DNA of 63,728 nt, filler included, from Octopus bimaculoides (GCF_001194135.2; 6 parts of 6 records of this genome joined end to end with filler, not necessarily neighbours in it), one strand, 5' to 3'; positions 11,629 to 34,651 are shown, counted from the whole stretch's first letter. Translations and numbers: made by a program. The notes: generated from the letters alone by a model not told the origin.

Positions 11629-12636
11629 CAAATATTATTTATAACTAGTATAAATTCTAAGCATTTAGACAGGTTTCTCTTACTCAAATCATACAAATTC
11701 ACGAAATATATTTTGTAATAATTCTTTATTACAAACGTCAGCTCACTATATATTAGTGACATTTTAAGTTCTAAATTAAAATGCTCCTGTCGTGCCTGAT
11801 ATAACCATTACCGAATCGCAAAATTTAACAATCTGTACGCTACATTAAATCTTAAAATCAAATTTTCTGGAGCCACTCCACAGCAAATATTCGTACTACT
11901 CACCAACAAAAGTCAAATTACCTCACTAGAGCGTGGGATACATAAGGAAGAGAACGATGTATATATNNNNNNNNNNNNNNNNNNNNNNNNNNNNNNNNNN
12001 NNNNNNNNNNNNNNNNNNNNNNNNNNNNNNNNNNNNNNNNNNNNNNNNNNNNNNNNNNNNNNNNNNNNNNNNNNNNNNNNNNNNNNNNNNNNNNNNNNNN
12101 NNNNNNNNNNNNNNNNNNNNNNNNNNNNNNNNNNNNNNNNNNNNNNNNNNNNNNNNNNNNNNNNNNNNNNNNNNNNNNNNNNNNNNNNNNNNNNNNNNNN
12201 NNNNNNNNNNNNNNNNNNNNNNNNNNNNNNNNNNNNNNNNNNNNNNNNNNNNNNNNNNNNNNNNNNNNNNNNNNNNNNNNNNNNNNTATATATATATATA
12301 TATATTTATCAGTTGAATAAAGTTAAAGCATGATCTATGGTATTTTAACGTTAAAAAAATATTTTGTAATGCTAATAAATTTAAATTATCACTTTCATAC
12401 ATAGAGTAATGATCAAATTTCAAATGTGTTTAATTGACAGTTGAGTTCTTGACAATTTGAGTACTTCTTAGAACGCTTCAACAAGCTGAATATTTAGAAT
12501 ACGGTTTTAAACAATCCGCATGCATCTCAAACATCACAGTTGGCCAGGCGTACCACCGTTCTGTAATTTGTTTATATTTACAAGCTAGAGATATTTTGGA
12601 AATCCACATCATTAACTGGTTGTTATGTTATTGTTG

Positions 12637-13747: not shown

Positions 13748-16161
13748 CGTTGATCAGAAACTACAACTTCATTGATAATACTCCGGATTTCCTCTTGTCA
13801 AATATCGTTCTGCTATGGAAATTCGGAAATAGTTATACCGGATTATATCTGACCGATTTCCTGGCCGTTATAATGAATGAAAGTAGAAATACCATTAATG
13901 AAAGTATACTACACTTGATAAATGCTTCATGTCATGGTATAATGTGTGTGCTTCATGTAGCACTAGTATAATAATAATAATAATATAAAACATACGTAGT
14001 AATTTTTGTTAAATAAAGTCACATTATGTGAAACAATACAGAATCTATCTTCGCATATGCATGATTTGGATTACGTAATATTCTGAAACAACTTTGTGGA
14101 TATACGCACAAATATAGATATGTTATATATGGTGAAATATAGACGACTACCAATGTTAACACGTAGTGAATTTGAACCAGAGACCTCGAACTTTCGAAGT
14201 GAAATTTTTAATCAATCTGCTATTCTGCGTGTACATCATATAATTGAAGTTAGTCTGTTATATTTCCTAGGTAGACTCATTTTCTCAATTCGGATTTTTG
14301 CAAGGTGGATTCCTGTTTTCCAGAGATCATTAATATGACAGAGAAATATTTTGGAAAAATGCAGTTACAAATAAGAGGAAGTATTATGTTATTATTGTCT
14401 ATAATATTCCTGTGGAAAATATTACTTGAACTGGAAAGGGTTGATGGACCTCGAAAACTTGCGTAAATAAAGTTGCTGACATAAGATGTATTGTTATTTA
14501 ACTGTTGATTGGATCCATGATATATCAGATGTTGTTATGATATTACATTTAAGAAGCTTATGATGGTAAGTACTTGAAACTCTAACTAAAAGCCGTAGTG
14601 TATCATAAATATGCGGCTTATGGTTACAATACAGTCATTTCATTTTATTATAAATGTCAAGCCGTTATTATAGAGATAATTATGAAAAACATTACAGAAT
14701 ATCTCCTTTATCTGAAGATGAGTAGATAATCGGTTGCTCTATAATGTGGAATAAATATTATTGGGTTTTAAATCCTTATTTATATAAAATAGCCTTGTAT
14801 TAGTTCGGTAATTTTAAAATGTTCTTTTCTAAACTTCATGCGGTACCTTTGAAATGAACTGCGCTAGTATTATGACATGATGATCTTTGAAGAAGATTTG
14901 CTTTCGTAATGCACCAGATTCATTACACATTAAGCTTTGCTTGACAGTAACCCAATCCACTCATTAAAAATCTCGCCGAATCACAAAAAGAAACATATAA
15001 AAGCGTTAAAATCAATGAATTCCAATAACTTCACACAATTCTGCAGGGTGTTGTCCTTCCATGAAAAAACTGAACAATTCGTTTTTTTAAAGTAAGTTTA
15101 GTTATCAAGAAACAAACTAGCTATTCTTATGTGCATAACGACTTTCGCATCAAAGTCCCTGTTAGATACAACAATAGTGAGCAATAGTAAAACATTTAGC
15201 GGGAAGTAGTTATTTTAGCTGTTTAGAAATAAAGGATATGAAATTCTGTGAATACATGCTCTTCTTGGTCATAAGTTTGGAACATATGTTTGAATATTAG
15301 AACTTTTTTCATTAAATGTTCAAAGTTATATTTGAATCGAATAGTATTTGGGCATAACAATTCTAATTAAGAAAAAAAACTTCCGAATTTTGGCCACGTC
15401 TCTACATTATTCTCTTACAATGGATCTGTTTTTTTTTTTCCATAAACGGAGAGAAATATATCTTGTTCTAAATAAAATGGATTTCAAAATGTGCATGCTG
15501 TATACGCCTATTTAGATCATTCCGTCATTTATTACTCGTGAATTCGAATATTCATAGTTTTTGCATAATACATAATGTACGCAGAAGAATAAGCTGGAGA
15601 ACTGTTAGCATGCTGGGTAAAATGCTTAGTGGCATTTTGTCCTTCTTTGCATATTGAGTTCTATCGCCAACGACAATTACTTTGCCTATCATCATTTACT
15701 GGGGCTGATAAAATAAGTGCTAGTTGAGCACTGTTGTCGAAGATATCGTTGATGCTGAAACAATATATTTAGCTACAAAAAGTTTGCATTGGCGCAGCGT
15801 TGTTGTTATAACAATGTAAGGGGAACGAACGACAATCTTTTGTACGTGTTTGAGTTATAGTCATGAAGTCCGCTTTTGTCGAGTTTCCAAGAGCTTACAT
15901 ATTAACAGCATTGGAAATTGTGTTTCAAATATGTAGATGGCTTAGTCTCTTTGCTAGCATTTTCATGTTAAAATGCAGAATATGCATGACTCCTCTGAAC
16001 TCATTACTTTAACATTAAGTGCATTCCGTGTATTTTTCGACAACAAACGTGTTCTCAATGAGGAATATGAGGTGATACTTTTGTCAGGTAGACAAAGCTA
16101 AGACATTTGACAAATAAATATTTAGATACTGTCCTTACGGTATTATCACATTTTCTGCGGA

Positions 16162-21880: not shown

Positions 21881-22671
21881 NNNNNNNNNNNNNNNNNNNN
21901 NNNNNNNNNNNNNNNNNNNNNNNNTTAATTAATTAANNNNNNNNNNNNNNNNNNNNNNNNNNNNNNNNNNNNNNNNNNNNAAAGGAAAATAGGACATCTA
22001 TGGACAACTGCTTCGAAACCTGCAGCTTCTATGTCCAGATTATGAATTTATATTCATACCAAAAATAATTGGAGCACTAGGTTTTGTTAGTAAATGCTTA
22101 AAGGAAAATCTGGNNNNNNNNNNACTGGGATTTTCAGAAAGAGAAATCGATCGGCTAATTCGTATATTACAAGGGCAATCTGTGAGTGGAACATTAAAAA
22201 TATGCAAGACTTTTCTCAAGTTCTAAATGTGAATTTNNNNNNNNNNNNNNNNNNNNNNNNNNNNNNNNNNNNNNNNNNNNNNNNNNNNNNNNNNNNNNNN
22301 NNNNNNNNNNNNNNNNNNNNNNNNNNNNNNNNNNNNNNNNNNNNNNNNNNNNNNNNNNNNNNNNNNNNNNNNNNNNNNNNNNNNNNNNNNNNNNNNNNNN
22401 NNNNNNNNNNNNNNNNNNNNNNNNNNNNNNNNNNNNNNNNNNNNNNNNNNNNNNNNNNNNNNNNNNNNCATGTGTCAAGAAATTACACTCACAAGGTATT
22501 GTTTGATGTACTCCCGCGGCATTGAGCTTTAGCTGACCGCATTCACGCAGTGGTTCTGAGTCCTTGACCACCTCTGCTCAATCAAGAATAACTTGGGGGT
22601 GGAGATTAAGCAACAACAACAACAATAACAACAATAGTCACATTAGTATTCAGTGTCCAATTAGACGATTG

Positions 22672-22677
22672 TTTATT
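22672..22677 (-). promoter_or_regulatory. Polyadenylation signal AATAAA of the CAP-ShKT gene
   Basis: AATAAA about 130 nt downstream of the stop codon on the minus strand. Confidence 0.6.
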
Positions 22678-22806
22678 AGCATCTTACAGAAGATTTCGTT
22701 TCGTTAAGTATTTGCAACTAGTGTTACAAATTTAAAAAATCTACTCTGCGACTGAAGGACTTAGATTCTTCTTGCCTAACCAAAGACCGTCAATGTCACT
22801 TCTGCT

Positions 22807-22919
22807 TCAGCAAGTCCTACATGATTTCCTGCAGTTCGTTCTCATATAATTTGGGTTATTGTTGCATTCTCCCATATCTGCCCACATTTTGCAGCTCTCG
22901 TTAAGGTCAGGACAAGGAT
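22807..22919 (-). CDS. Terminal coding exon, ShKT (ShK toxin-like) domain of a CAP/CRISP-like protein
   Basis: Acceptor ttttaatttctttttaaag|AT, phase 1. (D)PCPDLNESCKMWADMGECNNNPNYMRTNCRKSCRTC* has the 6-Cys ShKT consensus C..C.WA..GEC..NP.YM..NC.KSC..C. Confidence 0.92.
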
Positions 22920-23555
22920 CTTTAAAAAGAAATTAAAAGTCGTTTCACAGTACTATTAATAGAATTACCAGGCTGAATGAAATTCTTTTATCTCAATATT
23001 TCAATTCTTTCTAATGTATTTACTTAGAATTTCATTATTTCATACTGTGTTTGTGTATGTGCGCACGCAATGCAACTGAGATGATTCCTCTTTGTTCCCT
23101 TAGTATTTGNNNNNNNNNNNNNNNNNNNNNNNNNNNNNNNNNNNNNNNNNNNNNNNNNNNNNNNNNNNNNNNNNNNNNNNNNNNNNNNNNNNNNNNNNNN
23201 NNNNNNNNNNNNNNNNNNNNNNNNNNNNNNNNNNNNNNNNNNNNNNNNNNNNNNNNNNNNNNNNNNNNNNNNNNNNNNNNNNNNNNNNNNNNNNNNNNNN
23301 NNNNNNNNNNNNNNNNNNNNNNNNNNNNNNNNNNNNNNNNNNNNNNNNNNNNNNNNNNNNNNNNNNNNNNNNNNNNNNNNNNNNNNNNNNNNNNNNNNNN
23401 NNNNNNNNNNNNNNNNNNNNNNNNNNNNNNNNNNNNNNNNNNNNNNNNNNNNNNNNNNNNNNNNNNNNNNNTTTAAACTGCTTCTGGAAGTAGAACTTTG
23501 CTTCAGGAATTCTAAGGTTTTGAGGAGAGTGGAATCACCTGTTATCCATCATCTG

Positions 23556-23775
23556 AAGGCGCGTGGCTTAGTGGTTAAGGTAATGGATTCATGATCGCAA
23601 GATTGTAGTTTTGATTCCTGGGCCGGGCGACACATTGTGTTCTTGTACAAAACACTTTATTTCACGTTGTTCCAGTTTACACGGCAAAAATAAGTAATCC
23701 TGCGACAGACTGGTGTCCAGTCCACGAGGGGAACATATACGCCATGCAAACCGGGAAACCGGCCCTTATCAGTCG
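23556..23775 (+). mobile_element. tRNA-derived SINE
   Basis: A box TGGCTTAGTGG and B-box-like gttttgattcct, followed by a conserved SINE body. Confidence 0.75.
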
Positions 23776-23839
23776 ATATGATTCGAGAAGGTAAATTTAC
23801 CTTACTTTTGATAGCCACCATTGTTTCCAGTTCTACCCC

Positions 23840-24262
23840 GACCCGCAGTGGAAGCATCTGTTAGGGTCTCAGGTATGGCTTAATTAGCACATTAGGGCTT
23901 GCCTACCTGTGCTTGTGAAAGACTGAATCTGGCAGACTCTACAGAAGAAGCCTTCATGGTTCCAAGGCGGGAAAGATGGCTGCAACAATGTATTATGCAA
24001 TACAGAGANNNNNNNNNNCGGGAAAGATGGCTGCAACAATGTATTATGCAATACAGAGAGCAAGATGAGCCAAGCCAGACATCTTGGTCATCCACTACAT
24101 CCGTCTCCATCCCCAGTCGTCTTGACCTCGTCTTGCCACTGGACTGAAGATANNNNNNNNNNACAGTGAGGTTGATGGTGTGCAACTTTTCTTCACTTCA
24201 AAGTCGCTGTGCAAGTCATCGGTCATCCTTAACGATGACTGAATGGTCCTCGTCTCTCCGAC
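23840..24262 (+). mobile_element. Probable RTE-clade LINE 3' UTR fragment
   Basis: GC-richer block (ccagtcgtcttgacctcgtcttgccactggact...gtgaggttgatggtgtgcaac...gtgcaagtc) resembling recalled RTE 3' ends. Contains a gap-overlap duplication. Confidence 0.5.
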
Positions 24263-24344
24263 GAAATATGTATATGTATATATAAAAGTGTACGCGTGTG
24301 TAACTTAGCCATGGTGTCAGCGTTCACATAGCTTGAGATTGCCA

Positions 24345-24476
24345 GGCTGTCGTTTCGATGTTTCTATGGGGAGCTACAGCGGGGATGAGATCGCCGACCT
24401 CGTCGGGTTATTTATCTTGGATACCCTCAAGAAAAGCATTCACCCACACAAGTCGGCCCTTTCCAGGGACGACGGA
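24345..24476 (+). mobile_element. Naiad-type PLE reverse transcriptase fragment (motifs B'-C)
   Basis: FDVSMGSYSGDEIADLVGLFILDTLKK...LSRDDG versus family pattern FDV.MGSYDGAE.CELVGL.IL..L...GLYRDDG. Confidence 0.8.
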
Positions 24477-27017
24477 GAATGTAAACTCGTACAAGTTTAC
24501 ATTCTCCTAAAAGGAAGTTCTTATGAAAAAAAGGGGTCATTCACTCCCAGTGGTTTCTATGTTAGTTAAGCCATAGGTGGAAACCTAACTGGTGTTATTA
24601 CTCAGGGTCAGAGTAGACCTGGGAACCACAGNNNNNNNNNNNNNNNNNNNNNNNNNNNNNNNNNNNNNNNNNNNNNNNNNNNNNNNNNNNNNNNNNNNNN
24701 NNNNNNNNNNNNNNNNNNNNNNNNNNNNNNNNNNNNNNNNNNNNNNNNNNNNNNNNNNNNNNNNNNNNNNNNNNNNNNNNNNNNNNNNNNNNNNNNNNNN
24801 NNNNNNNNNNNNNNNNNNNNNNNNNNNNNNNNNNNNNNNNNNNNNNNNNNNNNNNNNNNNNNNNNNNNNNNNNNNNNNNNNNNNNNNNNNNNNNNNNNNN
24901 NNNNNNNNTGTGTTTACGCCCCTGTAACTTAGCGGTTCGGCAAAAGAGACCGACAGAAAAGGTACAAGGCTTAAAAATAAATAAATACTGGGATTGATTT
25001 GTTCGACTAAAAACCCTTCAAGGTGGTACTCCAGCATGGCCGCAGTCAAATGACTGAAANNNNNNNNNNNNNNNNNNNNNNNNNNNNNNNNNNNNNNNNN
25101 NNNNNNNNNNNNNNNNNNNNNNNNNNNNNNNNNNNNNNNNNNNNNNNNNNNNNNNNNNNNNAGGTGGTACTCCAGCATGGCCGCAGTCAAATGACTGAAA
25201 CAAGTAACAGAATACAATGTTAGCTCCAAATATTTTTACCTGATCTAATTCTGATATATGATGGCATCGACATAAAGTTGCCCAATACTTTATTACCAAT
25301 ATATAATCTCGGCAAATGGGAAATGCTACCCGTTTTCCCCATCAAAAGAGAGTATCTAGTTCACCATATGATACATGAGAAGACTTACCCATGGCTGCTA
25401 CATCANNNNNNNNNNNNNNNNNNNNNNNNNNNNNNNNNNNNNNNNNNNNNNNNNNNNNNNNNNNNNNNNNNNNNNNNNNNNNNNNNNNNNNNNNNNNNNN
25501 NNNNNNNNNNNNNNNNNNNNNNNNNNNNNNNNNNNNNNNNNNNNNNNNNNNNNNNNNNNNNNNNNNNNNNNNNNNNNNNNNNNNNNNNNNNNNNNNNNNN
25601 NNNNNNNNNNNNNNNNNNNNNNNNNNNNNNNNNNNNNNNNNNNNNNNNNNNNNNNNNNNNNNNNNNNNNNNNNNNNNNNNNNNNNNNNNNNNNNNNNNNN
25701 NNNNNNNNNNNNNNNNNNNNNNNNNNNNNNNNNNNNNNNNNNNNNNNNNNNNNNNNNNNNNNNNNNNNNNNNNNNNNNNNNNNNNNNNNNNNNNNNNNNN
25801 NNNNNNNNNNNNNNNNNNNNNNNNNNNNNNNNNNNNNNNNNNNNNNNNNNNNNNNNNNNNNNNNNNNNNNNNNNNNNNNNNNNNNNNNNNNNNNNNNNNN
25901 NNNNNNNNNNNNNNNNNNNNNNNNNNNNNNNNNNNNNNNNNNNNNNNNNNNNNNNNNNNNNNNNNNNNNNNNNNNNNNNNNNNNNNNNNNNNNNNNNNNN
26001 NNNNNNNNNNNNNNNNNNNNNNNNNNNNNNNNNNNNNNNNNNNNNNNNNNNNNNNNNNNNNNNNNNNNNNNNNNNNNNNNNNNNNNNNNNNNNNNNNNNN
26101 NNNNNNNNNNNNNNNNNNNNNNNNNNNNNNNNNNNNNNNNNNNNNNNNNNNNNNNNNNNNNNNNNNNNNNNNNNNGGCAAAATGTTTTAGCTCGTCTTCA
26201 CGTTCTGAGTTCAAATTCAGCCGAGATCGAATTTATCTTTCATCCTTTTGGGGGTCAATGAAATAAGTACCAGATGAGCACAAGAGTCGATTAAATTGAC
26301 TTACGCCCTCCTTCGGAATTGCTTGCCATGTGCCAAAATTTGAAATCTATTATTGCTTTCGTTATCTATAAAAGCCAACGTATTTTGTCTTTATGCACAA
26401 TAATATCTTCTGTTAAACGTTTGCGGGTGTTGTTCGATTAATTCTACACGCAGCACAAGAAACATATTTTCATTCCTTAAATCAACCAGATACCAGTGTA
26501 ACTAACAATAACAACAACACCCACACAACAATGTTTACATACATACATACATACTTATTTTGTGGCTGTGTCGTAAGTAACTTACTTACCNNNNNNNNNN
26601 NNNNNNNNNNNNNNNNNNNNNNNNNNNNNNNNNNNNNNNNNNNNNNNNNNNNNNNNNNNNNNNNNNNNNNNNNNNNNNNNNNNNNNNNNNNNNNNNNNNN
26701 NNNNNNNNNNNNNNNNNNNNNNNNNNNNNNNNNNNNNNNNNNNNNNNNNNNNNNNNNNNNNNNNNNNNNNNNNNNNNNNNNNNNNNNNNNNNNNNNNNNN
26801 NCGCTTGACAACCGATGTTTGTGTGTTTACGTCCCCGTAACTTAACGGTTCGGCACAAGGAGTCCGATAGAATAAGTATTAGGCTTACAAAGAATAAGTC
26901 CTGGGGTCGNNNNNNNNNNGTCGATTTGCTCGACTAAAGCCGGTGCTCCAGCATGGTCGCAGTCAAATGACAGAAACAAATGAAAGAATAAAAGAATAAA
27001 TATGAAATGTCTCTTAC

Positions 27018-27109
27018 CGTTACATAATCTGTTAGAACATCTATTAAAGTTAGCTGGACACATGGAGCAGGCACTACCACTTGTGTATATATTATTGCCA
27101 ATGTTTCCC
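27018..27109 (-). CDS. Internal coding exon: CAP (SCP/TAPS) domain C-terminus plus CRISP-type hinge
   Basis: Acceptor ctctgtctctctgtcatttttag|G and donor AACG|gtaaga. 92 nt, phase 2 to phase 1. GNIGNNIYTSGSACSMCPANFNRCSNRLCN matches CAP/CRISP GN....Y..G..CS.CP....C...LC. Confidence 0.9.
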
Positions 27110-28454
27110 CTAAAAATGACAGAGAGACAGAGTTACATGTGGGTTTCTTTGAGTGGCTGCAGGTAGTGTTGTCAGTGTTTATGTATGAGGATATATATAT
27201 ATTCAAAACTGTTCGTATATACACAGATAGACGGAGAGACGAACGGACGGACAGACAGTGAGACAGACAGACAGANNNNNNNNNNGACAGACAGACAGAC
27301 GAACGAATGGACAGACAAGCGGATGGACAGGCAAACAGACGGTCGGATAGACAAACAGCTGGATAGACAAGTAAACAAGTGAATGAAGGNNNNNNNNNNN
27401 NNNNNNNNNNNNNNNNNNNNNNNNNNNNNNNNNNNNNNNNNNNNNNNNNNNNNNNNNNNNNNNNNNNNNNNNNNNNNNNNNNNNNNNNNNNNNNNNNNNN
27501 NNNNNNNNNNNNNNNNNNNNNNNNNNNNNNNNNNNNNNNNNNNNNNNNNNNNNNNNNNNNNNNNNNNNNNNNNNNNNNNNNNNNNNNNNNNNNNNNNNNN
27601 NNNNNNNNNNNNNNNNNNNNNNNNNNNNNNNNNNNNNNNNNNNNNNNNNNNNNNNNNNNNNNNNNNNNNNNNNNNNNNNNNNNNNNNNNNNNNNNNNNNN
27701 NNNNNNNNNNNNNNNNNNNNNNNNNNNNNNNNNNNNNNNNNNNNNNNNNNNNNNNNNNNNNNNNNNNNNNNNNNNNNNNNNNNNNNNNNNNNNNNNNNNN
27801 NNNNNNNNNNNNNNNNNNNNNNNNNNNNNNNNNNNNNNNNNNNNNNNNNNNNNNNNNNNNNNNNNNNNNNNNNNNNNNNNNNNNNNNNNNNNNNNNNNNN
27901 NNNNNNNNNNNNNNNNNNNNNNNNNNNNNNNNNNNNNNNNNNNNNNNNNNNNNNNNNNNNNNNNNNNNNNNNNNNNNNNNNNNNNNNNNNNNNNNNNNNN
28001 NNNNNNNNNNNNNNNNNNNNNNNNNNNNNNNNNNNNNNNNNNNNNNNNNNNNNNNNNNNNNNNNNNNNNNNNNNNNNNNNTAGAGACAGATGGATATGTG
28101 CGCATGCGCGTGCACACAAACATACTCATACACATGCATACACCCATGCACAAACACACATACTAACACATATGTACATACACGCANNNNNNNNNNNNNN
28201 NNNNNNNNNNNNNNNNNNNNNNNNNNNNNNNNNNNNNNNNNNNNNNNNNNNNNNNNNNNNNNNNNNNNNNNNNNNNNNNNNNNNNNATTTGACTGTGGCC
28301 ATGCAGGAGCACCGCCTTTTAGTCAAGCAAATCGACACCAGGACTTATTTTTTGTAAGCCTAGTACTTATACATATATATGTATACAGGGAAATATATAT
28401 TAATTTCATACAAGAGAGTGCTGAATAGTTCTTGGCTTTGAGGATCAGCTGATT

Positions 28455-28701
28455 CTTTTATTCTTTTATGCATTTATTGGTTTCATTCATTTGACTGCAG
28501 CCATGCTGGAGCACTACGTTTAGCTGAACAAATCGATCCCAAGATTCATTCTTTGTAAGCCTTGTACTTATTTCTATCAGTCTCTTCTGTCGAACTGCAA
28601 AGTTACAGAGATGTAAACACACCAACATTGGTTGTCAAGCAATGGTGGAGGAGACAAACACATACACAAAAAAACACACACACATGCACACACACACACA
28701 G

Positions 28702-28736
<35 letters not shown>

Positions 28737-28875
28737 GGGCTTCTTTCAGTTTCCATCTACCAGATCCACTCACAAGGCCTTGGTTGACCCAAGGCTATAA
28801 TAGAAGACACTTGCCCAAGGTGCCACACAGTGGAACTGAACCTGGAACTATGTAGTTAGGAGCAAGCTTCTTACC
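28455..28875 (-). mobile_element. SINE family A, near full length with internal (CA)n
   Basis: gtttcattcatttgactgcagccatgctggagc...ggttgtcaagc...(CA)n...gggcttctttcagtttcc...gaagacacttgcccaagg...gaacc. Confidence 0.85.
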
Positions 28876-30550: not shown

Positions 30551-31648
30551 CAAACAATACACAATGCTTCAAGCGAACTACAATACTCTCCTATTACTAT
30601 TATTGTTATTGTCTAAAGTTAAGGGTAAATACTAAGCTGGGACATTGTACATACCACTTGTAAGGCGGACGTCCACTAGCGAGAATGTCATGGTGAAAAA
30701 AAAAAAAATAATAATAACTAAAATTGGTAAGAAGGATGAAATTAACGATAAGAACTGAAGGTGTGTTTCCTCCAATGCTGGCATCTGTATGCTCTCTGTG
30801 TTATCTGGTTTACTAAATTATTTTTGGAAAACAGAATGTGGAATAGCTCCAAGTTACAAAGAGGACAAAATTCTTTACCCTTGTCGTAGGGTATTGGGGT
30901 AGCCAGTATTGACCATTCCAAAGAGAATTGTTTATTGCAATCCTTAAGTTTCCAGATTAATTTACTTAGACCAGTACTATTAATTTTATTCCTATCCCTA
31001 AAGGAAGAATAATGGCTGGAAATTCTCTTGGAGACCTGCGTCGAGGAGCTACCCACATAATGCGAGACGTCTGTGTTAGTCATTACCTTACATTGATAAA
31101 CCACATTTTTGGTCCTGGCATTCGCACTTAAAAACTTAATTCTATTACAATTAGATTCCGAGATACTAATCTTATTGTTGTTACACTGATTGCTATATTT
31201 ACTAATGTTGTACTTATTACCTTTATTTTTTACCTAAATAACTTTTGCCACCATATGATGTGTTAAATTACTGGAGTAATTATTATTATTATTATTGTTA
31301 TAAACATTACTATTATTATCATCATAATTGGGATGGTTGACTGAAATTATAGGAAGATATTATCTGTAACAAATTTTTAGTATTAGAAAACCAAAATCTA
31401 ACCTTATGTGTGTTGATGATTGGGTAATAGTGAGAACCCCTAGGAAAGTTCCTATTCACCGCGTCGCGGAACTGCAAAACCAAATTGGATTTAACTTGTT
31501 TCCCGAACGGGACGATGAACCAGATATTTTCATCAGATCTAGGTACAGTGTTAGTATAGTTGAATAAATTAAGTTTTCTGTTTTTATTAAGGTGTTTAGA
31601 GCCAGTTAGGCCTCCTCCCTTATGTGAATGATTATAAGTATGTGCCAC

Positions 31649-32100: not shown

Positions 32101-32645
32101 TTAATAATATCAAGGGTAATGAGAAATATTAGAAATTTCTACTACCAGTGGCCTAACGTGTAAAAATTTAGTCAATAGACTATATATTATTCATATAAAT
32201 ACAATGTACATTTAAACACATAAGAGGTATCCATCATAGGATTCCTTGCACGCTAGAAAGAACAGCTAAGTTCCAAACCACTATTAGGGATAAAATAGGG
32301 AATGAAAAATAAAAACATTTACCATTTAGCTCCTAGATCATGGTTTCTGACTTATTTTAGCAAATAAAATAACTTGCCAGGTGAAGTCTTCTTCAGCAGG
32401 TACACCCAGATTAAACATATATTCACGAGGCAATCCCGTATATGCCCCATGCTTATACATTCTAATTTTTCAGATCTACCGCACAAGCGCAGCTGCTTGT
32501 TGGCAATAAATGAAAAATGCCGGTGTTTCAATTCGAAAATTATCCAGAAAAATTTATCAATAATTAATAACGTCAAGGGTAATAAGAAATATTAGAAATG
32601 TCTACTACCAGTGGCCTAGCGTGTAAAAATTTAGTCCATAGACAT
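32101..32645 (-). mobile_element. ~463-nt HHR-containing monomer flanked by ~80-bp direct repeats (pLTR or retrozyme-like)
   Basis: ttaataa..tcaagggtaat.agaaatattagaaat.tctactaccagtggccta.cgtgtaaaaatttagtc.atagac at 32101-32180 and 32564-32643. Degenerate HHR at 32332-32400 on the minus strand. Confidence 0.7.
32332..32400 (-). ncRNA. Degenerate type-I hammerhead ribozyme
   Basis: CCUG-CUGAAGA-A-GAC...GUC-A-GAAA-CCAUGA-UC/UAGG. Extra A before GAAA and a broken CCAUGG palindrome. Confidence 0.55.
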
Positions 32646-32654
32646 ATATATATA

Positions 32655-33395
32655 TGTATGTGCTACATCCTCGCCAGAAAAAGGGGAAAAGGGCTGCTTA
32701 TAAATGCCAAAACTTTCCCAGGCGAAGAATGTACCCCTCAACATAGATTAGTAGTTTGCGACTTCAGGATCAGGGCTAAATGGATGCCCAGAAGTAGACC
32801 AGCTTGGAGGAGAAGGATCTGGAAGCTTAAAGATCCTGCAAATGGACAGAGATTTAGAGACGTATTACTCGAAGCCTTCGACGAAATAGAAGGGGATATA
32901 GCATCGCATAATGTGGAAGACAACTAGAGGTTTCTACGGGACAACCTGCTGAGAGCCACTGACCAGATATGTGGATGGTGCAAAGTCTCCTCTCGATCCA
33001 AAGTAACGTGGTGGTGGAACAATGTGGTTGACAGGGCTGTTAGACAAAAGAAACAGGCTTGGAAGGACTGGAATAACGGAGGTAGCAGGGAATTGTATCA
33101 GACTGCCAGAAAGGAAGCTAGGAGACAGGTTTATTTAGCCAGAGGGGAAGCAGATAAGAAAAGATTTGCCAATGTTCTGCACCGTGAGGACCAAAGACTT
33201 GAGGTATTTCATGTTGCAAGACAGTGTGTGAGAGAGAATCGTGATGTTGTAGGAGAGAAATGTGTCCGCATGGATGATGGTTCACGTGCACTAAACGAGG
33301 CTGCAAAGAGAGAGGTTTGGAGATGCCACCATGAAAGGTTGCTTAATAAAGAGAATGAATGGGAGTAAGAGAGTCTGCCGAATGTCGACCCAACA
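32655..33395 (+). mobile_element. RTE-clade LINE fragment (APE C-terminus and linker)
   Basis: NAKTFPGEECTPQHRLVVCDF...IWKLKD...TWWWNNVVDRAV..KKQAWK.W...REVW..H.E.LLN.ENEW. Confidence 0.9.
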
Positions 33396-34651
33396 GGGTC
33401 TTTTCTCGCCGGTCCGTCCTAGCCCGTTCTCTTGGATGTGGTTTCGCTAGNNNNNNNNNNAAGAGAGTCTGCCGAATGTCGACCCAACAGGGTCTTTTCT
33501 CGCCGGTCCGTCCTAGCCCGTTCTCTTGGATGTGGTTTCGCTAGACAGTGGACAGGGACAGTGGGAATCTCGTTGATCCACTCATGCGCGTCACTAATTA
33601 GACGACGAGGATTAATCAACGAAATACAGTGTCTGCAAGTTGATGGGTACCTCATATTCCCCTCCATTATCTAAAACTGGAATTTCCGTTTATAGATGNN
33701 NNNNNNNNNNNNNNNNNNNNNNNNNNNNNNNNNNNNNNNNNNNNNNNNNNNNNNNNNNNNNNNNNNNNNNNNNNNNNNNNNNNNNNNNNNNNNNNNNNNN
33801 NNNNNNNNNNNNNNNNNNNNNNNNNNNNNNNNNNNNNNNNNNNNNNNNNNNNNNNNNNNNNNNNNNNNNNNNNNNNNNNNNNNNNNNNNNNNNNNNNNNN
33901 NNNNNNNNNNNNNNNNNNNNNNNNNNNNNACACCCAGTCTAATGCTGGCAGCAGCGCAGCACGTAGAACTAGGACTAGGAAAGTTTTGTGGTTCAACCCA
34001 GCTTTCAATATGGCCGTAAGAACTAATATAGGTAAGGAATTCTTAAAATTGGTCACTAGGCACTTTCAACCTGATCATAAGTTTTACAGAATATTTAATA
34101 GAAGAACGCTTAAGATTAGCTATTCTTGCTGCAAAAACTTCGCCTCTTCGATCAGCCAGCACAACAATAAGATAATTGCCAAAAACAATAATGCCGACTC
34201 ACTTACAAAGAGCTATAATTTCAAAGATCGAACCTCCTGTCCGTTGGAAGGGAGATGTCTAGAAAAGGGTATCGTGTATAGGACCAAAGTCCAGATAGAA
34301 GCTCGCACGATTATAGAACTTATACAGGGGCTACAGAAAATTCTTTTAAAACCAGGCTGTATTCGCACAGCAATTCTTTTAGATACCCTGAAAATAGGAC
34401 AAAGACGAGCCTGGCAAAATANNNNNNNNNNNNNNNNNNNNNNNNNNNNNNNNNNNNNNNNNNNNNNNNNNNNNNNNNNNNNNNNNNNNNNNNNNNNNNN
34501 NNNNNNNNNNNNNNNNNNNNNTCTTTTCTCTCATATGTTCATATGTTGTGACGGAGAAAAACACAAGAGTATTATCATAGTAGACATCACCATGCTTGAT
34601 CGCTAAATCCACAGGTTTTTTTATTCTCTCTCTGTTTATTTTCTCTTATTC

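What the first reader, a model, noticed from the sequence alone, without database searches (positions are those of the whole stretch)
22672..27109. Hidden CRISP-architecture gene: CAP + hinge + ShKT, largely missed by the ORF track
Seen: two minus-strand exons with canonical splice sites and compatible phase (AAC G|AT) splice to ...GNIGNNIYTSGSACSMCPANFNRCSNRLCNDPCPDLNESCKMWADMGECNNNPNYMRTNCRKSCRTC*, followed by AATAAA. Established: 4 hinge Cys plus 6 ShKT Cys is the 10-Cys cysteine-rich domain layout of vertebrate CRISPs. CAP proteins have been reported from cephalopod posterior salivary (venom) glands, and ShKT folds include K+-channel modulators. The ShKT here is the canonical invertebrate WA..GEC..NP.YM..NC.KSC..C type. 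Inference: a secreted venom, immune or reproductive CRISP-like protein, possibly unannotated because its upstream exons fall in gaps.
Basis: partly seen in the sequence, partly recalled or inferred. Interest (0 to 1): 0.75.

Follow-up and report, generated by a model that had tools for sequence, protein, structure and literature searches.

The report
Octopus CAP-ShKT gene, 3' half
The two exons are real and form the tail end of an ordinary, already-known octopus secreted CAP-ShKT (CRISP-like, venom-gland type) gene, which looks "hidden" only because a gap-bounded piece of the Octopus bimaculoides assembly is flipped and cuts the gene model in two.

Summary
Both exons are at the stated places, with the stated splice sites, peptide, stop codon and AATAAA. 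The peptide has a ShK domain (Pfam E=4e-10) and a 4-Cys hinge that aligns to a snake CRISP.

The window is Octopus bimaculoides chromosome CM046628.1 (100% identity). The exons are coding exons 4 and 6 of the orthologue of O. sinensis XP_029653452/XP_029653443. Those are 237-aa signal peptide + CAP + hinge + ShKT proteins, 87% identical to the window peptide. Introns and 3'UTR are collinear with O. sinensis at 70-93% identity.

- A 30-nt in-frame mini exon (GGHSGDVAAM) lies between the two exons. Its 3' end is at 25389-25405; the rest is in gap 25406-26175. The direct 27018/22919 junction is therefore probably not the main one.
- The CAP exons are not upstream in this piece. Exon 1 and half of exon 2 lie about 8-10 kb beyond the ShKT exon's end of the block, on the opposite strand. 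They are annotated as the truncated 88-aa LOC106878583. Exon 3 is missing.

The block holding exons 4-6 sits between two exactly 100-N gaps and is inverted. This is most likely a scaffold orientation error. The biology is ordinary; the result is a useful annotation fix.

The parts
27018..27109 (-). Coding exon 4 of 6. The first base completes an Arg codon. It then encodes GNIGNNIYTSGSACSMCPANFNRCSNRLCN, which is the end of the CAP domain (tail of the CAP2 motif) plus the 4-Cys hinge. It ends in phase 1 (AAC G|).
   Evidence: Sequence and splice sites. tblastn with P0054 residues 160-191: E=5e-14, 81% identity. Same exon borders as O. sinensis L001 17433-17524.
25389..25405 (-). The visible 3' end (17 nt, ..T GAT GTA GCA GCC ATG G|gtaagt = DVAAM) of the 30-nt mini exon 5. 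In O. sinensis this exon encodes GGHSGDVAAM. Its acceptor and first 13 nt fall in gap 25406-26175.
   Evidence: O. sinensis exon L001 19890-19919 (cag|GAGGACATTCAGGTGACGTAGCAGCCATGG|gtaagtc). The blastn block L001 19904-20149 = window 25405-25162 is 92% identical.
22807..22919 (-). Coding exon 6: DPCPDLNESCKMWADMGECNNNPNYMRTNCRKSCRTC plus the TGA stop. This is a complete 6-Cys ShKT domain.
   Evidence: Pfam ShK 40.5 bits, E=4e-10. tblastn with P0054 residues 201-237: 92% identity, E=4e-23. PDB 2mcr ShK-type domain E=9e-8. Stop coordinates.
22672..22806 (-). 3' UTR ending in AATAAA (22672-22677). The UTR and the signal are both conserved in O. sinensis.
   Evidence: aligned UTRs, AATAAA in both. 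The blastn block L001 22035-22665 = window 23109-22470 is 89.6% identical.
21981..28186 (-). Block collinear on the minus strand with the 3' half of the O. sinensis gene plus 0.7 kb beyond it (L001 23043 back to 16548). It is the part of a roughly 10.4-kb segment, bounded by two 100-N gaps, that lies inside this piece. The segment is inverted relative to the 5' half of the same gene.
   Evidence: collinear blocks, 70-93% identity. (in L003 the 5' half is '+' collinear and this block is '-' collinear). (a further '-' match in the same segment).
28187..28286 (.). An exactly 100-N gap where homology to the orthologous gene ends. It is probably a scaffold join. Exon 3 (O. sinensis L001 about 15772-15886) belongs to the interval L001 14977-16547, which has no counterpart in the assembly.
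   Evidence: tblastn finds no exon 3 in the piece or in L003.

Best explanation
The finding is the last three coding exons of the Octopus bimaculoides orthologue of the octopus CAP-ShKT gene. These are exon 4, the 3' end of a 30-nt exon 5, and exon 6 with its 3' UTR. The orthologues are O. sinensis XP_029653452/XP_029653443 and O. vulgaris CAI9743039-41.

The full protein in sister species is 237 aa. It has a signal peptide, a CAP domain, a 4-Cys hinge, a short flexible Gly-rich linker (exon 5) and one ShKT domain.

In the O. bimaculoides chromosome assembly, the roughly 10.4-kb segment holding exons 4-6 lies between two 100-N gaps. It is inverted relative to exons 1-2. Exons 1-2 are about 8-10 kb away on the other strand and are annotated as the truncated 88-aa LOC106878583. 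Exon 3 and the first half of exon 2 are unsequenced. Wrong orientation of a small scaffold is the most likely cause, so the gene is probably intact in the animal.

Inferred function: a secreted salivary (venom-gland) CAP protein. By analogy with CRISPs, the hinge + ShKT module would bind an ion channel or another surface target while the CAP domain anchors or presents it. That mechanism is an analogy and has not been shown.
For: Shown:
- The exons, splice sites and peptide are as described.
- The peptide has a ShK domain above the Pfam cut-off and a hinge + Cys-rich alignment to stecrisp.
- The closest protein is P0054, at 87% identity over the whole peptide, with a 10-residue insert exactly at the exon A/B junction.
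- O. sinensis has a six-exon structure with identical borders.
- The mini-exon end is visible in the window.
- Introns and UTR are collinear at 70-93% identity.
- The window is 100% identical to O. bimaculoides CM046628.1.
- Exons 1-2 are '+' collinear and exons 4-6 are '-' collinear. The two homology blocks are complementary and do not overlap (they end at L001 14976 and start at L001 16548). Both breaks fall at exactly 100-N gaps.
- No stops or frameshifts are present, all 10 Cys are kept, and there are about 11 nonsynonymous against about 8 synonymous changes over 164.5 and 36.5 sites, giving pN/pS of about 0.3.
- The orthologue model has pLDDT 88.5 and matches GLIPR1 and snake CRISPs at E=1e-13 to 5e-16. 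The exon-5 linker has pLDDT of about 53.

From the literature and by inference:
- CAP is among the most abundant families in the O. vulgaris posterior salivary gland proteome (PMC7693380).
- ProteinGroup 654 of that study has 79.6% identity over 157 aa to the H. maculosa partial CAP. This is the same figure as P0054 against P0152, 125/157.
- CAP-ShKT proteins are ancestral and widespread in molluscs (PMC6409789).
Against: - No RNA evidence from O. bimaculoides was available, so expression, the exon 4-5-6 junctions and the link to exons 1-2 are inferred from orthologues.
- Exon 3, half of exon 2 and 13 nt of exon 5 cannot be inspected, so a disabling mutation there cannot be excluded.
- An inversion whose breakpoints sit in gaps could still be real.
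- Matches between window >28286 and the region downstream of the O. sinensis gene are only repeats, so the right-hand flank's orientation is not established.
- No cephalopod CAP-ShKT protein has a demonstrated molecular target.
Confidence: 0.8

Rival explanations
1. The inversion is real. In O. bimaculoides the gene was split by a roughly 10-kb inversion. The window's exons are then the dead, or separately transcribed, 3' remnant of a CAP-ShKT gene.
For: The chromosome assembly shows the two halves on opposite strands. Both NCBI models of the 5' half are truncated. No gene is called over the ShKT exon.
Against: Both breakpoints coincide with exactly 100-N gaps. The missing interval (L001 14977-16547) is simply absent rather than rearranged. 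The exons are intact with all Cys kept, splice sites and AATAAA are conserved, and pN/pS is about 0.3. That ratio also reflects constraint on the O. sinensis lineage, so it is only weak evidence. The truncated models are explained by gaps inside exon 2 and at the join.
Confidence: 0.12
2. This is a two-exon 3' end spliced directly 27018 to 22919, giving a vertebrate-like 10-Cys domain with no linker, and the CAP exons lie in the gaps upstream (28-47 kb) on the minus strand of this piece.
For: The phase is compatible and skipping exon 5 stays in frame. With exon 5 skipped, the spacing LCNDPC matches LCTNPC of stecrisp. An oyster homologue has a shorter linker.
Against: All four 237/253-aa models in O. 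sinensis and O. vulgaris include the mini exon, and its end and donor are conserved in the window. No CAP exon is found in 20 kb of upstream sequence. The intron homology that is clear downstream (84-93%) is absent upstream of 28186. Exons 1-2 are found elsewhere. The upstream gaps nearest the exons total about 1.4 kb, while about 7.4 kb of gene would need to fit.
Confidence: 0.04
3. The window holds a separate, 5'-truncated second copy (a partial duplicate) lying tail-to-tail with LOC106878583, rather than the other half of the same gene.
For: O. sinensis has two near-identical copies on one chromosome. A further CAP paralogue (P0208) lies about 85 kb away in O. bimaculoides.
Against: The two O. 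sinensis copies are about 138 kb apart and in the same orientation. In O. bimaculoides the two homology blocks are exactly complementary, with no part of the gene represented twice.
Confidence: 0.04

Closest known systems
[quoted passage not shown]
   Same: The window peptide is 87% identical. Exon borders, the mini exon, the 3' UTR with AATAAA and the intron sequence are all shared. Pfam finds CAP + ShK. These are the orthologues.
   Different: There are nine amino-acid differences, all outside the cysteines. The window's gene is split and partly unsequenced in its assembly. The NCBI name is misleading, because no LCCL domain is recorded.
Octopus bimaculoides LOC106878583 (XP_014783316.1, 124 aa, and the 88-aa model P0261), 'uncharacterized protein'
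   Same: It lies on the same chromosome, about 8-10 kb from the window's exon 6. It holds exon 1 and the 3' half of exon 2 of the same orthologue: signal peptide, FHNDLR and CHYTQ.
   Different: It is on the opposite strand in the assembly. The model runs into intron 2 and lacks exons 3-6, so no Pfam domain is recorded for it.
Molluscan type I CAP-ShK proteins (Gerdol et al. 2019, PMC6409789), including CreCAP-ShK1 and the partial Hapalochlaena maculosa CAP (ACJ22636.1)
   Same: All have a signal peptide + CAP + canonical ShKT. CreCAP-ShK1 is a profile hit at E=1e-60. P0152 (157 aa) is 80% identical to the octopus proteins. It is inferred, not shown, to be the H. maculosa record, from its length and the 79.6% figure.
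   Different: The octopus proteins carry one ShKT where Cumia carries two or three. I did not compute the phylogenetic placement in type I.
Vertebrate CRISPs (snake-venom stecrisp 1rc9, triflin 1wvr, natrin, pseudechetoxin; mammalian CRISP1-4)
   Same: They share the three-part layout of CAP, 4-Cys hinge and 6-Cys C-terminal domain. There is a sequence match to 1rc9 over hinge + Cys-rich domain, and full-length fold matches of the orthologue model.
   Different: The Pfam Crisp model is below its cut-off, while the ShK model fits. A 10-residue flexible linker sits between hinge and ShKT. The high rmsd of 6-8 Å reflects a different domain orientation. Per PMC6409789, ShKT recruitment to CAP may be independent in different lineages.

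Membership tests
ShKT / ShK-like domain (Pfam PF01549) | A domain of about 36 residues with six cysteines in the C..C..C..C..C..C pattern that scores above the family's gathering threshold | tested here: met
   Residues 32-67 of the spliced peptide cover profile positions 1-37 of 37, at 40.5 bits against a cut-off of 20.9, E=4e-10. All six Cys are present. PDB 2mcr ShK-type domain E=9e-8.
CAP superfamily (Pfam PF00188) | A CAP/SCP domain with the CAP1-CAP4 motifs | tested here: inconclusive
   The window itself holds only the last residues of the domain (R-GNIGNNIY, the tail of CAP2). No CAP motif or exon was found elsewhere in the piece. The rest is inferred. Exon 1 and half of exon 2 of the same gene are in L003 with FHNDLR and CHYTQ. 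The full-length orthologues carry PF00188. Exon 3 and the GRGENL part of exon 2 are unsequenced.
CRISP hinge | Four cysteines directly after the CAP domain, aligning with the hinge of solved CRISPs | tested here: met
   C-x2-C-x6-C-x4-C is present in exon 4. phmmer aligns YTSGSACSMCPANFNRCSNRLCNDPC to stecrisp 160-185. The hinge has pLDDT 89-96 in the orthologue model.
Vertebrate CRISP subfamily (CAP + hinge + Crisp/ICR domain, Pfam PF08562) | A C-terminal domain matching the Crisp model above its threshold and abutting the hinge | tested here: not met
   PF08562 scores 14.9 bits against a cut-off of 27, E=0.042. The orthologues insert a 10-residue linker, encoded by exon 5, between hinge and ShKT. 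The overall fold of the orthologue still aligns to snake CRISPs over 225-229 columns. So the protein resembles a CRISP but does not belong to the vertebrate family as Pfam defines it.
Molluscan CAP-ShK type I (PMC6409789) | A secreted protein with a CAP domain followed by 1-4 canonical ShKT domains, falling in the type I clade | tested here: inconclusive
   The architecture is met through the orthologues. CreCAP-ShK1 is a strong profile hit. The paper places the partial H. maculosa protein in type I. No tree was computed here.
CRISPLD2 (the name NCBI gives the O. sinensis orthologue) | Two C-terminal LCCL domains | tested here: not met
   The precomputed Pfam record for P0054 lists only PF00188 and PF01549, and the protein is 237 aa. 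The name reflects only a best hit on the CAP domain.
K+-channel-blocking ShK toxins | A functional Lys-Tyr dyad and demonstrated channel block | not tested
   By eye, the segment between the third and fourth Cys reads NNNPNYMRTN, so a Tyr is present but no Lys is adjacent to it. Activity would need electrophysiology.

The most novel reading that the evidence does not exclude
The most novel reading not excluded has two parts.

First, the 30-nt exon 5 and its downstream intron may act as a switch. Inclusion would give CAP-hinge-linker-ShKT. Intron retention would give a 211-aa CAP-hinge protein without ShKT; this matches O. vulgaris model CAI9743041 and the inferred length of the salivary-gland transcript behind proteinGroup 654. 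Skipping would give a vertebrate-like CRISP spacing. One octopus venom-gland gene would then produce products with and without the channel-binding module.

Second, the inversion may be real, and O. bimaculoides may have lost this venom CAP-ShKT gene.
Probability: 0.15. Interest if true: 0.35.

Novelty: already known. Interest (0 to 1): 0.15.

Why it matters
The main value is for annotation. A salivary-gland (venom-type) CAP-ShKT gene of the reference octopus O. bimaculoides is represented only by an 88-aa 'uncharacterized' stub, because a small gap-bounded block is flipped and one exon is unsequenced. Comparative counts of venom gene families that rely on this annotation will therefore miss the gene or misclassify it. 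That agrees with a 2020 O. vulgaris proteome study, whose best database hit for this protein was a partial blue-ringed-octopus sequence rather than any O. bimaculoides protein. Nothing here changes what is known about CAP or ShKT biology.

Tried and rejected
- The word-index homologue search with the 67-aa peptide found nothing. This was a false negative, because P0054 shares long exact stretches with it. The exhaustive HMMER search found P0054.
- PROSITE-style CAP motif regexes over six frames gave only chance hits. The 'HNDFR' at 46895-47203 has no CAP support.
I used tblastn with the orthologue instead.
- Pfam on ten long ORF segments of the piece gave nothing above threshold.
- The first structure prediction, with a 6-row alignment, was poor (pLDDT 56.8). 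I repeated it with 61 rows.
- A literature search for the orthologues' accession numbers found nothing. Two cephalopod venom papers had nothing on CAP, and a third only lists cysteine-rich secretory proteins among gland proteins.
- I tried to show that window >28286 is collinear with the region downstream of the O. sinensis gene. Only repeat matches came back, so this is unresolved.
- The look-up of the older 124-aa model P0253 is not on record.
Full report
**1. Observation**

On the minus strand there is an exon at 27018-27109, with acceptor tttttAG|G and donor AACG|GTAAGA. A terminal exon starts at 22919 after tttaaAG|AT. Joined in the stated phase, they read GNIGNNIYTSGSACSMCPANFNRCSNRLCN|DPCPDLNESCKMWADMGECNNNPNYMRTNCRKSCRTC*. 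The TGA stop is at 22807-22809 and AATAAA at 22672-22677. The cysteine count is 4 + 6.

Pfam finds a complete ShK domain at 40.5 bits against a cut-off of 20.9, E=4e-10. The vertebrate Crisp model scores only 14.9 bits against a cut-off of 27. Against PDB sequences, the ShKT part matches a ShK-type domain (2mcr, E=9e-8). The whole hinge plus Cys-rich stretch aligns to the snake CRISP stecrisp 1rc9, residues 160-214, at E=0.005.

**2. What it belongs to**

An exhaustive HMMER search returned mostly multi-ShKT proteins. One single-stretch hit covered the entire peptide at 87% identity: P0054, 237 aa. P0054 is Octopus sinensis XP_029653452.1. There are near-identical copies, XP_029653443.1 in O. 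sinensis and CAI9743039-41 in O. vulgaris. It carries Pfam CAP + ShK and has a hydrophobic N-terminus that looks like a signal peptide (by eye).

Related CAP + ShK proteins occur in Argonauta, oysters, abalone, scallops and many gastropods, including CreCAP-ShK1. Gerdol et al. 2019 describe CAP-ShKT proteins as ancestral in molluscs. They place a partial Hapalochlaena maculosa gland protein in their type I clade (PMC6409789).

**3. Gene structure and the missed exon**

tblastn of P0054 on its own locus, L001, shows six coding exons. The window's two exons are exons 4 and 6, with identical borders.

Between them, O. sinensis has a 30-nt exon: cag|GAGGACATTCAGGTGACGTAGCAGCCATGG|gtaagtc, encoding GGHSGDVAAM. 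The window shows its last 17 nt and donor at 25389-25405 (TGATGTAGCAGCCATGG|gtaagtc, DVAAM), directly after gap 25406-26175. Its acceptor and first 13 nt are in the gap.

All four 237/253-aa sister-species models include this exon. One O. vulgaris model (P0157, 211 aa) instead reads on into the following intron and lacks the ShKT. The direct 27018/22919 junction is therefore probably not the main one.

In a confident AlphaFold model of the orthologue (61-row alignment, pLDDT 88.5, pTM 0.81), the hinge and ShKT are well ordered. The exon-5 residues form a low-confidence linker with pLDDT of about 53. Foldseek against the PDB gives human GLIPR1 at E=5e-16. It then gives snake-venom CRISPs (pseudecin, triflin, pseudechetoxin, natrin, stecrisp) at about 1e-13, over 225-229 aligned columns.

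**4. Gap test**

blastn of the O. sinensis loci against the piece gives one collinear minus-strand chain from L001 16548 to 23043, equal to window 28158 down to 21981, at 70-93% identity.

- Every gap inside the finding is intronic and is spanned collinearly. The exception is 25406-26175, which cuts exon 5.
- Gaps 24009-24018, 25060-25161 and 27276-27285 are flanked by exact duplicates of 41, 39 and 14 nt. They are unmerged overlaps, not missing sequence.
- The 691-N gap 27390-28080 corresponds to about 24 bp in O. sinensis.

**5. Where the CAP exons are**

tblastn with P0054 finds nothing for residues 1-159 anywhere in the piece. Unique homology to the O. sinensis gene stops at the 100-N gap 28187-28286.

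A profile search turned up two truncated O. bimaculoides models of LOC106878583: P0261 (88 aa) and P0253 (XP_014783316.1, 124 aa). They contain exon 1 and the second half of exon 2, then run into intron 2.

The locus of P0261 is L003, GCA_001194135.2 chromosome CM046628.1, positions 8503069-8525078. It is 100% identical to the window over three stretches, with window = L003 + 2850. This identifies the window as O. bimaculoides.

- In L003, exon 1 (10001-10165) and the exon-2 fragment (11885-11989) are on the plus strand. The ShKT exon is on the minus strand at 20070-19960.
- L003 7059-14822 is '+' collinear with L001 5732-14976. An exactly 100-N gap follows (14823-14922). The sequence from L003 19131 onward, which is window 21981-28186, is '-' collinear with L001 23043 back to 16548. 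It ends at the second exactly 100-N gap.
- A small extra '-' match inside the same segment agrees.
- The two homology blocks are complementary and non-overlapping. The interval between them, L001 14977-16547, contains exon 3 and is absent.

The simplest reading is that one small original scaffold of about 10.4 kb was inserted in the wrong orientation during chromosome scaffolding, with exon 3 lying in the join. A real inversion cannot be excluded with these data. No gene is called over the ShKT exon in the collection's annotation of this assembly.

**6. Is the copy functional?**

The visible exons have no stops or frameshifts. All ten cysteines, the splice sites and the AATAAA are conserved. 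Against O. sinensis there are about 11 nonsynonymous and about 8 synonymous changes over 164.5 and 36.5 sites, so pN/pS is about 0.3. This indicates constraint. The sample is small, and the ratio also reflects the O. sinensis lineage.

**7. Function**

In O. vulgaris, CAP proteins are among the most abundant families of the posterior salivary gland proteome (PMC7693380). In that study's tables, CAP proteinGroup 654 (TRINITY_DN13140_c0_g1_i2) has as its best hit the 157-aa partial H. maculosa CAP ACJ22636.1, at 79.6% identity and 74.4% coverage. That is the same identity as P0054 against the 157-aa P0152, 125/157. The coverage implies a query of about 211 aa, which is the length of P0157.

I infer that this gene family is the one detected in the gland. 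The mechanism is inferred only by analogy with CRISPs and ShK-type domains: a CAP domain as carrier or anchor, and a hinge + ShKT module acting on an ion channel. It is untested in cephalopods.

**8. Verdict**

The gene is an ordinary member of a known, annotated molluscan family. Its 'hidden' state comes from gaps and a flipped block in the O. bimaculoides assembly. Interest is low, apart from the annotation fix.

Noticed in passing
window 24009-24018, 25060-25161, 27276-27285: These three assembly gaps are flanked by exact duplicates of 41, 39 and 14 nt, so the contig ends overlap and nothing is missing. The 691-N gap 27390-28080 corresponds to only about 24 bp in O. sinensis.
   Followed up: yes
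window 25342-25405 (minus strand): Reading on from exon 5 into the intron gives DVAAMGKSSHVSYGELDTLF*. The O. vulgaris model CAI9743041 (211 aa) ends the same way (DVAAMGKSSPVYIMLK). This suggests an intron-retention isoform without the ShKT domain, and the O. vulgaris salivary-gland transcript behind proteinGroup 654 appears to be 211 aa long.
   Followed up: partly
L004 (O. bimaculoides CM046628.1 8598844-8640482), about 85 kb from the window: A paralogous CAP gene (P0208, 'peptidase inhibitor 15-like', 160 aa) has the same exon 1-3 structure. Its model stops right after exon 3. No hinge or ShKT exon was found within 10 kb downstream, but 44% of that locus is N. It is either another truncated model or a CAP-only paralogue.
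   Followed up: partly
window 30745-31233 (-) and 33932-34420 (+): Two 163-aa open frames that by eye resemble a GIY-YIG-type nuclease module of a mobile element (VVYQCKV...HYVGSS...R...H; CPLC). They have no Pfam hit above threshold. A LINE-like open frame lies between them at 32586-33365 (+).
   Followed up: partly
window 24909-25059, 26802-27000, 28287-28370, 28454-28875, 36947-37317: Multiple copies of an octopus short interspersed repeat (tttcagtcatttgactgcggccatgctggag...) lie in the introns and flanks. There is also a 174-bp unit in 2.1 tandem copies at 36947-37317. The same repeats occur many times in the O. sinensis loci.
   Followed up: no
window 34422-34521: A further exactly 100-N gap, probably a scaffold join like the one at 28187-28286. 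The order and orientation of sequence beyond it are not verified.
   Followed up: no
L003 11570-11884 (outside the piece): A 315-N gap removes the first half of exon 2 (the WSKQLATEANKW...GRGENLAFDS part) of LOC106878583. This is why the NCBI models splice exon 1 to a mid-exon position.
   Followed up: partly
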